From Diadema antillarum (lineage: Eukaryota), in assembly GCF_040938485.1 (NCBI RefSeq), contig NW_027270942.1:248001-312000 (forward strand): DNA of 64,000 nt. Reading direction: 5' to 3'. Of this stretch, positions 61,253 through 64,000 are shown piece after piece (position 1 is the stretch's first letter; each line of letters begins with the position of its first letter). Below the pieces are notes generated by a model. It was not told where the DNA came from. It worked only from the letters and a program-made list of their open reading frames with translations, and made no database searches. Made by a program: the position numbers and the translations under genes.

Positions 61253-61418
61253 TATTAATGTTAAAATCAAACAAAACTTCTATTACTCAAATTCATGAAT
61301 TTCTTCCGTCGAGATGTTTTCATTGCAACTGATTGACAAATTGCCCTACATCGACGTAAATAAGCACTGAATTGATCAGTGTTTAGTAGTAGCCATGATA
61401 AAAAATCATGGGCGTACA

Positions 61419-61490
61419 TACTCGAGCAGGATTCGAACCTACGACCTCCTGATCACCGGACAGGCGTCATCTCCACTAGACCACCGAGCT
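61419..61490 (-). pseudogene. tRNA-Thr-derived sequence (SINE-like head / pseudo-tRNA)
   Basis: 72 nt; A box TGGTCTAGTGG, B box GGTTCGAATCC; foldable acceptor, D and T stems; anticodon arm CCTGT-CCGGTGA-TCAGG resembles tRNA-Thr but has a 31:39 mismatch, C33 and a GGT triplet; T6 run shortly downstream. Confidence 0.7.
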
Positions 61491-61748: not shown

Positions 61749-61820
61749 AGCTCGGTGGTCTAGTGGAGATGACGCCTGTCCGGTGATCAGGAGGTCGTAG
61801 GGTCGAATCCTGCTCGAGTA
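61749..61820 (+). pseudogene. tRNA-Thr-derived sequence, mirror copy
   Basis: Same as 61419-61490 except B box GGGTCGAATCC (T54-equivalent changed to G). Confidence 0.65.
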
Positions 61821-62912
61821 TGTACGCCCATGATTTTTTATCATGGCTACTACTAAACACTGATCAATTCAGTGCTTATTTACGTCGATGTAGGGCAATT
61901 TGTCAATCAGTTGCAACTTCTATTACATAGTGTATTTGATTTTGTTTAAGTTTGCTGTCTTCGCGAAAGGCAATCTGGTTTTCCCCATTGTGTAAAGTCT
62001 TTATAGGTGCAGAGCGTCGTGAGCAGAGACCATTTACACAATATATTGAGTTTGCAAAACAACAACAACGACATAATGAAGTCATTTATCGTGCCAAAAC
62101 TGGTCTCAAATTCGGATTTATATATCGTAACACTCTGTTGATCGAGAACACAAACACTCTTATACATCGTTAAATTCTTGAAGCAAATATATTACCGAGA
62201 GATACGTGAAAGCAGTGATAAAAAGGTCCATACATAAGCATTTTCGCAGTAATTATATCATACGCAAACATAATTTTCGATCACTACCCCCTTGTGACAT
62301 AATATTGACAGCCATTAAAAACAAGAAAAATAAACTGGCTCAACAAGTATTTTGTCGTTATTCGTAATCCTCTATCTATATACACACAGGCCTCGTATCT
62401 CCCGACAACATCTATTTTAGTACGATTGTAATGTCCAAATTCTGGGGACAAAAATCCGGTGTAAAGATGACTTTTATAAACAGAGTAAAGGTAGCAAAAA
62501 AAAAAAAGCAGCACAAGTTTAATAAAGTCCACATTGGCACAAAAACAACATCAGATAATTATGTATGGTAGTTATGAAGATTTCAACTTCTCCATTTTAT
62601 TTCTACATACGAAACACTTTTATGCTTCGCACATCACATAAAGTCGAAGGGCATGTCCAAATTCTCCCGTGTGGTCTCACACCAATTTTCTGTATTTCCT
62701 TAACTGTAGACGAATTTTTAGAGAAGACCTTTTGCTTCAATCTACCATAGAATTGTTACGATATATAGCTATACTGAGTATTATGGATGTCTAAAGGTTG
62801 AGTTGCAATTACGTATCATCAATCATTGCCAAAAGTATATTAAAGTCAATCCCATAAATTGAAAGGAGATATAAGAGCCTGCATAATTGTGAAGATATGA
62901 TGCCTCTGTACC

Positions 62913-62963
<51 letters not shown>

Positions 62964-63029
62964 CAATAATAAAGTCACAACAGAGGAATGCAGGGAATGC
63001 ATTAATAGCCAATCTTGATTTAATGAATA

Positions 63030-63067
63030 ATCCGAATTTTCGAGGAACCTTCCTCTTCTTCAGGGAT
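63030..63067 (-). ncRNA. Minimal type I hammerhead ribozyme motif, mirror copy
   Basis: Exact reverse complement of 63092-63129. Confidence 0.65.
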
Positions 63068-63091
63068 GACAGTGCGAATATTCACACTGTC

Positions 63092-63129
63092 ATCCCTGAA
63101 GAAGAGGAAGGTTCCTCGAAAATTCGGAT
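63092..63129 (+). ncRNA. Minimal type I hammerhead ribozyme motif
   Basis: AUCC-CUGAAGA-A-GAGGA(AGGU)UCCUC-GAAA-AUU-C-GGAU; predicted cleavage after C63125. Confidence 0.65.
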
Positions 63130-63229
63130 TATTCATTAAATCAAGATTGGCTATTAATGCATTCCCTGCAATCCTCTGTTGTGACTTTATTATTGCTATT
63201 TCTTAGTACTGCCAATACGCGGAACAACT

Positions 63230-63277
<48 letters not shown>

Positions 63278-64000
63278 TAGATATGTATACTAAATTTGTG
63301 GGTTTTTTTTTTCTTCTCTGTGAGACGATGGTAAGCATTCAATAACTCAATAACTCAATAATAATATCGCTACAATGCTATAGAAATTTGATGTGAAATA
63401 AATTAGTATCGAAGAAAGGACTCAAATTTCTTGCAGCAATGATTGACTTTTAAATCAATCAATTACTGTGCGGCTGTATGTATTAAGCGAGTGGATAATA
63501 TGGAAGTAGAAGCTCTGCTGGTACTGAAAACCTAAATCAACAAGAACAACCGCAAAAAAAAAACCCGAATGCTACTGACTGTTATTGTTGTTGTTGTTGT
63601 TGTTGTTGTTGTGGAAGTTGTTGAAGTTGCTGCAGTGATGATGGGGGTTATGACTGTGTGTGGCTGGTCTATAATATGAGATTCTTTCAATTTGAAATTC
63701 AACTCAATTTGAGTTTGATCTTTATTATCAAGACTGATATTTGCAATAAATCGCACGTTGAAATCAATCGCTTGTAAGATTTATGATATAGCTATAGGAC
63801 CAGAATAATTGTGAAATTGATTTCAATCACATCGAGCGTAAGTTTGTTTACAAGTGCGCGTAACTACGGTTTTTTTAATACCATCGCAGACACACAAGAA
63901 TCTAAGAGCTTCACGTGTTGGGGCGCCAAGTGTCGCATGGCCTATTTCGTTACGAAACCAGACATTTTTGTTGACGAAATTACCATTTCGATCGTTAACG

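What the first reader, a model, noticed from the sequence alone, without database searches (positions are those of the whole stretch)
63030..63129. Back-to-back minimal hammerhead ribozymes, one on each strand
Seen: all core nucleotides in type I order. Stem I AUCC/GGAU, CUGAAGA, one extra A, stem II GAGGA-AGGU-UCCUC, GAAA, then A-U-U-C. Stem III collapses to the self-complementary AAUU and the cleavage triplet is UUC (after 63125; mirror 63034). ATTAAA follows ~10 nt later. Established: PLE pseudo-LTRs encode minimal hammerheads with very short palindromic stem III proposed to cleave as dimers, and an extra A after A9 is a known natural variant. Inference: transcription from either direction makes a potential self-cleaving RNA. 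Read-through of the whole palindrome would pair it with its antisense and silence it, a built-in switch. Stem I is only 4 bp plus weak extension, so activity is unproven.
Basis: partly seen in the sequence, partly recalled or inferred. Interest (0 to 1): 0.8.

Follow-up and report, generated by a model that had tools for sequence, protein, structure and literature searches.

The report
Truncated jumping-gene ends carrying hammerhead motifs
The two mirror-image 'self-cutting RNA' motifs are real examples of the minimal hammerhead already known from Penelope-like jumping genes, sitting in a dead, head-to-head pair of truncated tail ends of such an element, so the find is genuine but of a known kind.

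Summary
Both strands carry a complete minimal type I hammerhead motif at 63092-63129 (+) and 63067-63030 (-). The motif is not chance: a descriptor gave 0 hits in 200 simulated windows. A covariance model trained only on other families of this genome finds exactly these two sites in the window (27.2 bits, E about 6.5e-5).

The 238-bp palindrome is neither a designed device nor a MITE. It is two 118-nt, 5'-truncated, head-to-head copies of the 3' end of an autonomous Penelope-like element (PLE), with a 36-nt 'tail' on one side, inserted in (TA)n. The parent element (L063) encodes RT, a Cx4CxxC linker and GIY-YIG, and its 3' UTR ends in exactly this arm. At least eight 3'-module families of this genome carry the same motif format, four of them next to RT/GIY-YIG ORFs. 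That format matches the min-HHR class of Cervera & de la Pena 2014.

The 'built-in switch' idea is unsupported, because arm lengths vary between copies and a read-through RNA folds into a perfect hairpin. Cleavage is untested.

Side leads are an A(A/U)UAAA hexamer just after the ribozyme in six of eight families, and a few arms that start exactly at the predicted cut.

The scan has noted similar hammerhead-armed foldbacks elsewhere in this genome.

The parts
62915..62961 (.). Left (TA)n microsatellite, the insertion target
   Evidence: Nearly all copies of the family abut (TA)n on both sides.
62962..63079 (-). Left arm: a 118-nt 5'-truncated copy of the PLE 3' end, sense on the - strand, without a tail
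   Evidence: It is the reverse complement of the right arm. It matches the last 118 nt of the 3' UTR of the autonomous element at L063:6281-6398.
63030..63067 (-). Minimal hammerhead motif on the - strand; predicted cut after C17 at 63034
   Evidence: Descriptor hit. Covariance model R1 gives 27.2 bits, E 6.5e-5.
63076..63083 (.). Palindrome centre: GAATATTC, an 8-nt palindrome already present in the parent 3' UTR, shared by both arms. This is the fold-back junction.
   Evidence: Centres differ between copies by length and filler.
63080..63197 (+). Right arm: a 118-nt 5'-truncated copy of the PLE 3' end, sense on the + strand
63092..63129 (+). Minimal hammerhead motif on the + strand. Helix I is 63092-95 with 63126-29. 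The core CUGAAGA is 63096-63102. The extra A is 63103. Helix II is 63104-08 with 63113-17. GAAA is 63118-21. AAUU is 63121-24. C17 is 63125.
63135..63140 (+). ATTAAA hexamer, starting 10 nt after the predicted cut. A(A/U)UAAA sits 1-5 nt after helix I in 6 of 8 families.
63198..63233 (+). 36-nt PLE 'tail' on one side only (35 nt in the consensus; this copy has one extra T)
   Evidence: 25 of 26 inverted-pair copies carry exactly one tail. In a related family the tail is the first 63 nt of the next tandem unit.
63234..63279 (.). Right (TA)n microsatellite, the insertion target

Best explanation
The stretch is the middle of a dead insertion of a Penelope-like retrotransposon (PLE) into a (TA)n microsatellite. 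Two copies of only the last 118 nt of the element's 3' UTR lie head to head, and one of them is extended by the 36-nt 'tail' typical of PLE insertions.

Each arm carries the family's minimal type I hammerhead, so one motif appears on each strand.

In the parent element the motif lies about 735 nt downstream of the RT/GIY-YIG ORF and 72 nt before the element's 3' end. By analogy with the published PLE min-HHRs, it is expected to cut the element's RNA after C17 when two motifs pair through the self-complementary AAUU. This step is inferred, not shown here.

The palindrome most likely arose during integration. The first cDNA strand was primed in the tail and then turned back on itself at the natural GAATATTC palindrome and copied itself (inferred). 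In this copy the two motifs are probably inert relics, because any transcript crossing the palindrome folds into a perfect hairpin.
For: 1. The motif is present and non-random.
2. A covariance model trained only on four other PLE families of this genome finds exactly these two sites in the 64 kb.
3. L063 holds the autonomous parent.
   - It has a 754-aa ORF with RVT_1 (8.9e-15) and, by eye, a DKG motif, a Cx4CxxC linker and GIY-YIG.
   - The ORF is 51% identical over 606 aa to a PLE ORF whose GIY-YIG passes Pfam's cut-off.
   - Its 3' UTR ends in the window's arm, then the tail, then (TA)n.
4. The genome holds 607 hammerhead arms and 685 3'-terminal arms of this family, with 0 hits for the reversed controls. 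The distance between the two hammerheads of a pair is variable, and sampled arms run from 42 to 242 nt or more.
5. Each inverted-pair copy examined has one tail (25 of 26). A subfamily-diagnostic site agrees between the two arms in 24 of 26 copies.
6. Four PLE families of this genome with the RT/GIY-YIG ORF beside the motif (A, alpha, beta, gamma), and four further 3'-module families (delta, B, C, D), have the same motif format at the same place.
   - In 272 kb scanned there were 89 hits and 0 in reversed sequence.
   - All 21 distinct variants carry an extra A, G10.1-C11.1 and a 4-nt palindrome, although the descriptor did not require these.
7. Across 12 distinct sequences, 93.3% of cells are paired against 63.4% in shuffles. 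Eight of 9 pairs show compensatory changes, and 0 of 500 shuffles reach the observed score.
8. The format matches the published PLE min-HHR class, and the inverted-copy, tail and microsatellite architecture matches published PLE insertions (PMC4209133; PMC8557442).
Against: - No cleavage data exist for this or any sea-urchin PLE hammerhead. Published min-HHRs cut poorly in vitro.
- Rfam hammerhead models do not score the site.
- The isolated 38-mer's minimum-energy fold pairs CUGAA with UUCGG instead of forming helix I (-11.2 against -10.0 kcal/mol for the hammerhead fold).
- The AAUU duplex alone is unstable (+2.2 kcal/mol).
- Within the family, the motif is no better conserved than its flanks.
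- The alignment behind the covariation counts was fitted to the model. The families were first found with a descriptor that demands pairing.
- The snap-back origin is inferred from junction anatomy only.
Confidence: 0.88

Rival explanations
1. The hammerhead-shaped module is kept in PLE 3' ends as a recognition or folding element for the element's reverse transcriptase, or for 3'-end formation, rather than as an active self-cleaving ribozyme.
For: - About 89% of arms that keep the 3' terminus also keep the motif (607 against 685).
- In two families the commonest short arms end only 3-14 nt upstream of the motif.
- DNA copies contain uncut motif plus downstream sequence, so the templates were uncut or religated.
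- Published min-HHRs have low in vitro activity.
- An A(A/U)UAAA hexamer follows the motif in 6 of 8 families.
Against: - Every catalytic-core position is kept across families whose helices have fully diverged. This includes the C3-G8 to U3-A8 covariation; H17 other than G was required by the descriptor. A mere protein-binding hairpin would not need this.
- The 5'-end hot spots just upstream of the motif coincide with natural short palindromes that explain them mechanically.
Confidence: 0.15
2. The palindrome is itself a functional unit: a non-autonomous hairpin element, a source of small RNAs, or the strand-dependent ribozyme switch the first reader proposed.
For: - The family has hundreds of short inverted copies.
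- The whole palindrome folds as a perfect 118-bp RNA hairpin.
- There are sub-threshold matches to hairpin microRNA families (MIR6426 at 58.7 bits against a gathering score of 96).
Against: - Arm lengths, centres and symmetry differ from copy to copy, and single-arm copies are common.
- The microRNA matches are far below threshold and reflect hairpin shape only.
- No head-to-tail junction exists in the genome (0 hits).
- The arms are 3' ends of a coding PLE.
Confidence: 0.06
3. It is a chance hammerhead-like string inside an ordinary MITE or foldback DNA transposon that inserts at TA.
For: - The repeat is short, palindromic and high-copy, and is flanked by TA repeats.
- Rfam gives no hammerhead hit.
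Against: - There is an asymmetric tail on one side only.
- Inner ends are variable while outer ends are fixed.
- The arms are identical to the 3' UTR of an RT/GIY-YIG element.
- Simulations gave 0 hits.
- The same motif, with compensatory helix changes, occurs in seven other families.
Confidence: 0.01

Closest known systems
Minimal hammerhead ribozymes (min-HHR) of metazoan Penelope-like elements (Cervera & de la Pena 2014, PMC4209133)
   Same: - Type I order, with a short helix I (3-5 bp).
- An unpaired nucleotide between A9 and G10.1, and a G10.1-C11.1 pair.
- No loop 3; a palindromic 15.x/16.x stretch instead (AAUU, AGCU or ACGU).
- U3-A8 core variants in sister families.
- Location in the terminal repeat or 3' end of PLEs, with many solitary truncated copies.
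- Pairs on opposite strands 100-700 bp apart were already noted in that paper.
   Different: - Helix II here is 4-5 bp, against the 7-8 bp described for Schistosoma.
- The host is an echinoderm according to earlier scan notes; no paper in the searchable library reports sea-urchin PLE hammerheads.
- The two motifs here are only 24 nt apart.
PLE insertion architecture (Craig, Yushenova, Rodriguez & Arkhipova 2021, PMC8557442)
   Same: - 5' truncation.
- An adjacent inverted 5'-truncated copy.
- A 30-40-bp tail at one end only.
- Insertion bias for microsatellites.
- A CX2-5CxxC linker before a C-terminal GIY-YIG, as in the Neptune and Nematis clades.
   Different: - In that paper's Discussion the (TA)n bias is stated for Naiads, which lack canonical hammerheads. 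Here hammerhead-bearing elements with a C-terminal endonuclease target (TA)n.
- Clade assignment was not tested by phylogeny.
Metazoan non-LTR retrozymes (Cervera & de la Pena 2020, PMC7229834; Li et al. 2026 preprint, 10.64898/2026.07.22.740005)
   Same: Short non-coding repeats that carry type I hammerheads and are linked to PLEs.
   Different: Retrozymes are head-to-tail tandem repeats with canonical hammerheads (loop-loop contacts) that yield circular RNAs. Here the copies are inverted, the motif is minimal, and no head-to-tail junction exists in the genome.
L1 5' inversion by twin priming, and hairpin self-priming by reverse transcriptases (from general knowledge)
   Same: Inverted structures are created during reverse transcription at the target site, with junctions at microhomologies.
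   Different: Both arms here copy the same 3' segment and share variants, which fits fold-back on one cDNA rather than two primers on different parts of one RNA.

Membership tests
Hammerhead ribozyme, PLE minimal type I class | Catalytic core in type I order: C3(U3) U4 G5 A6 N7 G8(A8) A9, then G12 A13 A14, A15.1/U16.1, and H17 other than G | tested here: met
   CUGAAGA at 63096-63102, GAAA at 63118-21, U16.1 at 63124, C17 at 63125. The mirror copy is on the - strand.
Hammerhead ribozyme, PLE minimal type I class | Helices I and II flank the core, with G10.1-C11.1, and are supported by covariation | tested here: met
   Helix I is AUCC/GGAU and helix II is GAGGA/UCCUC. Across 12 distinct sequences from eight families, 93.3% of cells are paired, 8 of 9 pairs have compensatory changes, and G10.1-C11.1 is invariant. 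The alignment was fitted to the model.
Hammerhead ribozyme, PLE minimal type I class | An unpaired nucleotide between A9 and G10.1, and a palindromic 15.2-16.2 stretch without loop 3 | tested here: met
   The extra A is at 63103 and AAUU is at 63121-24. All 21 distinct variants in this genome show both features although the descriptor did not demand them.
Hammerhead ribozyme, PLE minimal type I class | Recognised by an independent profile of the class | tested here: met
   Covariance model R1, built from families alpha, beta, gamma and B only, finds exactly the two sites in the window (27.2 bits, E 6.5e-5).
Hammerhead ribozyme (Rfam families RF00163, RF00008, RF02275-7) | Score at or above the Rfam gathering threshold | tested here: not met
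   No hammerhead family matched at E<=10 on 62850-63350. From my own knowledge, the Rfam hammerhead models expect a closed helix III, which this class lacks.
Hammerhead ribozyme, PLE minimal type I class | Site-specific self-cleavage after H17 | not testable with these tools
   There is only an indirect hint. Four independent insertions have arms that begin exactly at G1.1. This was not cleanly replicated in family alpha.
Penelope-like element (PLE) | A single ORF with a PLE-type RT (DKG motif) and a GIY-YIG endonuclease | tested here: met
   For the ORF at L063:3295-5559: RVT_1 at 8.9e-15; DKG, Cx4CxxC and GIY-YIG motifs read in the translation; GIY-YIG by Pfam only 0.0089, below the cut-off; 51% identity over 606 aa to a PLE ORF whose GIY-YIG passes the cut-off.
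Penelope-like element (PLE) | Insertion anatomy: 5' truncation, an inverted adjacent copy, a one-sided 30-40-bp tail and a microsatellite target | tested here: met
   for family A. A tandem array with an inverted upstream copy and a tail is seen for family gamma.
MITE / foldback DNA transposon | Fixed terminal inverted repeats at both ends, symmetric structure, target-site duplication | tested here: not met
   There is a one-sided tail. Inner junctions vary while the outer 3' ends are fixed. The arms are a retroelement 3' UTR. Target-site duplication cannot be read inside (TA)n.
Metazoan non-LTR retrozyme | Head-to-tail tandem repeats, each with a canonical type I hammerhead, giving circular RNA | tested here: not met
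   The arrangement is inverted. A pattern for a tail-to-arm head-to-tail junction gave 0 hits in the genome. The motif lacks loop 1 and loop 3.
microRNA precursor (MIR6426, mir-1677) | Score at or above the Rfam gathering threshold | tested here: not met
   58.7 against 96 bits, and 46.2 against 84 bits. The matches reflect hairpin shape only.

The most novel reading that the evidence does not exclude
The genome may hold a fossil record of what these minimal hammerheads do in vivo.
- Some insertions are cDNA copies of RNAs whose 5' end is exactly G1.1, the nucleotide after the predicted cut. This would be the first in vivo evidence that PLE min-HHRs cleave.
- The conserved order is hammerhead, then A(A/U)UAAA, then about 50-65 nt, then the unit boundary, then the ORF start. 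This suggests the ribozyme trims the leader supplied by the upstream repeat, while the hexamer ends the upstream unit's message.
Probability: 0.25. Interest if true: 0.6.

Novelty: new member of a known kind. Interest (0 to 1): 0.3.

Why it matters
That turns a striking 'double ribozyme palindrome' into an ordinary by-product of PLE integration.

The wider value is modest. The genome offers several young PLE families with the same ribozyme format but fully diverged helices, and hundreds of truncated copies whose junctions record how the reverse transcriptase turned around. This is good material for testing whether PLE minimal hammerheads cut in vivo and how the odd inverted-plus-tail insertions arise.

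Tried and rejected
- **Rfam on the window and on 62850-63350.** No hammerhead was found. Only sub-threshold hairpin microRNA-like hits appeared, which I rejected as shape artefacts.
- **Rfam RF00163 over the whole genome.** Nothing rang, not even in the control genomes, so the search is uninformative.
- **Blastn of the arm against 30 PLE loci found through GIY-YIG.** No similarity was found. The parent was found instead through the variable spacing of hammerhead pairs.
- **Head-to-tail (retrozyme-like) junction pattern.** 0 hits, so the retrozyme reading was rejected.
- **Core-versus-flank conservation inside the family.** There was no difference. I judged the test powerless at about 1% divergence.
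- **Relaxed hammerhead search in PLE family epsilon, L038-L043 and L045.** None was found within the 1.5-kb flanks. For L038-L043 the 3' UTR seems longer than the flank. The question is left open.
- **Replication of the 'arm starts at G1.1' footprint.**
  - Family gamma has too few short copies.
  - Family alpha shows a diffuse cluster 51-64 nt from the end, with four arms at 57 and only one at the exact site, 60.
  - The exact 72/70 junction of family A occurs at only 3 loci genome-wide.
  - The footprint therefore stays a lead.
- **Bacterial promoter and terminator scan.** It is irrelevant for this eukaryote.
- **Big protein searches, structure prediction and complex prediction.** They were not used, because the family scans settled the protein.

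Full report
**1. What is in the sequence**

The + strand at 63092-63129 reads AUCC | CUGAAGA | A | GAGGA-AGGU-UCCUC | GAAA | AUU | C | GGAT.
- This gives all hammerhead core positions in type I order, with one extra A after A9 and a G10.1-C11.1 pair.
- There is no loop 3. Instead there is the self-complementary AAUU, followed by C17 at 63125.
- ATTAAA lies at 63135-63140.
- The same string is on the - strand at 63067-63030.

The two copies are the arms of one spacer-less palindrome, 62960-63079 / 63080-63199, 98% complementary.

A descriptor written after Cervera & de la Pena's min-HHR finds exactly these two sites in the window. It finds none in 200 simulated windows.

Rfam's hammerhead families do not score the site even at E<=10. 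The only matches are sub-threshold hairpin microRNA families.

**2. What the palindrome is**

The repeat is abundant in the window's own 1.75-Gb assembly.
- Alignment of 28 copies shows a fixed outer end on both sides and a variable centre.
- A 35-nt extension lies on one side only.
- (TA)n flanks nearly every copy.

Genome-wide there are 607 copies of the 38-nt hammerhead and 685 copies of the 3'-terminal 38-mer, each at up to 3 mismatches. The reversed controls gave none.

The two hammerheads of a pair lie from 8 to 5419 nt apart (start-to-end coordinate difference). The arms are therefore independently truncated copies of something longer.

The longest pair (L063) shows what that is.
- It has a 754-aa ORF with RVT_1 at 8.9e-15.
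[quoted passage not shown] Pfam scores the GIY-YIG at only 0.0089.
- The ORF is 51% identical over 606 aa to another PLE ORF of this genome whose GIY-YIG passes Pfam's cut-off.
- Its roughly 840-nt 3' UTR ends with exactly the window's arm, then the 35-nt tail, then (TA)n.

The window element is therefore two 118-nt, 5'-truncated, head-to-head copies of the 3' end of an endonuclease-bearing Penelope-like element.

Inverted 5'-truncated copies, a one-sided 30-40-bp tail and microsatellite targeting are published hallmarks of PLE insertions (PMC8557442).

**3. How the palindrome probably formed (inferred)**

- The centre, GAATATTC at 63076-63083, is a natural 8-nt palindrome of the parent 3' UTR.
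- Other copies join at other short natural palindromes: CG, AATT, TTAA, and in family alpha the small hairpin TCAA-CAC-TTGA.
- 25 of the 26 copies examined have exactly one tail; in L021 the tail is cut to about 9 nt and was not scored. A subfamily-diagnostic T/C site agrees between the two arms in 24 of 26.

This fits one cDNA that was primed in the tail, copied the RNA, and then folded back and copied itself. It does not fit two unrelated RNAs, and it does not fit a DNA transposon.

In a tandem array of family gamma (L168), the tail is simply the first 63 nt of the next unit. That stretch includes the ORF's start codon, which lies 4 nt after the unit boundary. Tail-bearing copies therefore come from templates that span a unit junction.

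**4. Is the hammerhead real?**

The strongest evidence is comparative. Wherever a PLE 3' end was in reach, the same format appears at the same place, 55-76 nt before the unit end and on the sense strand. Four families (A, alpha, beta, gamma) have the RT/GIY-YIG ORF beside the motif; delta, B, C and D are known only as short 3' modules.
- Helix I is 3-5 bp.
- The core is CUGANGA or its U3-A8 covariant UUGANAA.
- An extra A follows.
- Helix II is 4-5 bp and opens with G-C.
- GAAA follows.
- Next comes a 4-nt palindrome (AAUU, AGCU or ACGU).
- Then comes C or U at position 17.

In 272 kb there were 89 hits against 0 in reversed sequence. The extra A, G10.1-C11.1 and the 4-nt palindrome were present in all 21 distinct variants, although the descriptor did not demand them.

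A covariance model built only from families alpha, beta, gamma and B finds exactly the two sites of the finding in the whole window (27.2 bits, E about 6.5e-5).

On 12 distinct sequences, 93.3% of pair cells are standard pairs. Shuffles give 63.4%, and shifted registers give 22-43%. Eight of nine pairs carry compensatory changes. The alignment was fitted to the model, so these counts lean towards the structure.

The features are those that Cervera & de la Pena list for metazoan PLE min-HHRs (PMC4209133):
- a short helix I;
- an unpaired nucleotide between 9 and 10.1;
- G10.1-C11.1;
- a palindromic 15.2-16.2 stretch;
- U3-A8 variants;
- pairs on opposite strands.

**5. What remains unshown**

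Cleavage is untested.
- The monomer's minimum-energy fold uses an alternative CUGAA/UUCGG pairing. It scores -11.2 kcal/mol against -10.0 for the hammerhead fold.
- The AAUU duplex alone is unstable at +2.2 kcal/mol.
- This agrees with the weak, dimer-dependent in vitro activity reported for the class.

A transcript through the whole palindrome is a perfect hairpin of -213.7 kcal/mol. In this copy the motifs are therefore probably inert.

Inside the family the motif is no better conserved than its flanks: 1.16% against 0.80% changes per site over 52 arms. That is what young dead copies would show in any case.

**6. Leads**

- *Hexamer.* A(A/U)UAAA follows helix I within 1-5 nt in six of eight families whose surrounding sequence is otherwise unalignable.
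- *Arms starting at the cut.* 59 family A loci were chosen by the 3' terminus, not by the hammerhead.
  - Four independent insertions have arms that begin exactly at G1.1, 72 nt from the 3' end, where no natural palindrome exists.
  - This is what run-off copies of hammerhead-cleaved RNA would look like.
  - Family alpha shows only a diffuse cluster near its site.
  - The exact family A junction occurs at just three loci genome-wide.
  - This remains a lead.

**7. Verdict**

The Penelope-type hammerhead reading is supported, and the 'switch' reading is not.

This is a new member of a known kind, in a well-understood kind of dead insertion.

The scan has noted look-alike hammerhead-armed foldbacks elsewhere in this genome. 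One of those notes gave me families B, C and D.

No masked stretch was touched. Nothing in the window looked human.

Noticed in passing
window 63135-63140; L036, L046, L056, L060, L031: A poly(A)-signal-like hexamer (AAUAAA or AUUAAA) lies 1-5 nt after helix I of the hammerhead in six of eight PLE 3'-module families. It sits 46-63 nt before the unit end, and the surrounding sequence is otherwise unalignable between families.
   Followed up: partly
L070, L071, L084, L093 (G000:C163:2493190-, C138:604500-, C21:2969580-, C52:647688-): Truncated family A arms begin exactly at G1.1, the nucleotide after the predicted hammerhead cut, in four insertions with different flanks. This may be a footprint of in vivo cleavage. 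It was not cleanly replicated in family alpha.
   Followed up: partly
L168 (G000:C753:448500-457500): A tandem array of a full-length PLE (family gamma). Units are 3864 nt and each carries a 1031-aa ORF that starts 4 nt after the unit boundary. A partial unit and an inverted truncated copy lie upstream. The terminal 63-nt 'tail' is the first 63 nt of a unit.
   Followed up: partly
L001, L002 (G000:C575:333051-333311 and 314168-314428): Two further loci are 100% identical to the window's element, including its unique flanks, in reverse orientation and 19 kb apart. This looks like a segmental duplication or uncollapsed haplotigs of this region.
   Followed up: no
L038-L043 (for example G000:C705:820441-823710): One PLE family with a GIY-YIG ORF of up to 909 aa has a long 3' region with internal TA-rich microsatellites. 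No hammerhead motif was found within 1.5 kb downstream.
   Followed up: partly
window 61418-61490 (-) and 61749-61821 (+): Two tRNA genes on opposite strands lie inside what another note calls a 594-bp palindrome, 1.2 kb upstream of the finding.
   Followed up: no
L031:706-905 and L031:962-1450; L032:4839-5170: Three other short foldback PLE 3'-end insertions (families D, B and C) lie within 14 kb on the same contig. Each sits in (TA)n, has a one-sided tail and carries its own hammerhead variant. Two of the variants have the U3-A8 core.
   Followed up: yes
window 25066-25196, 28876-29008, 58677-58808: Three runs of N (131-133 nt each).
   Followed up: no
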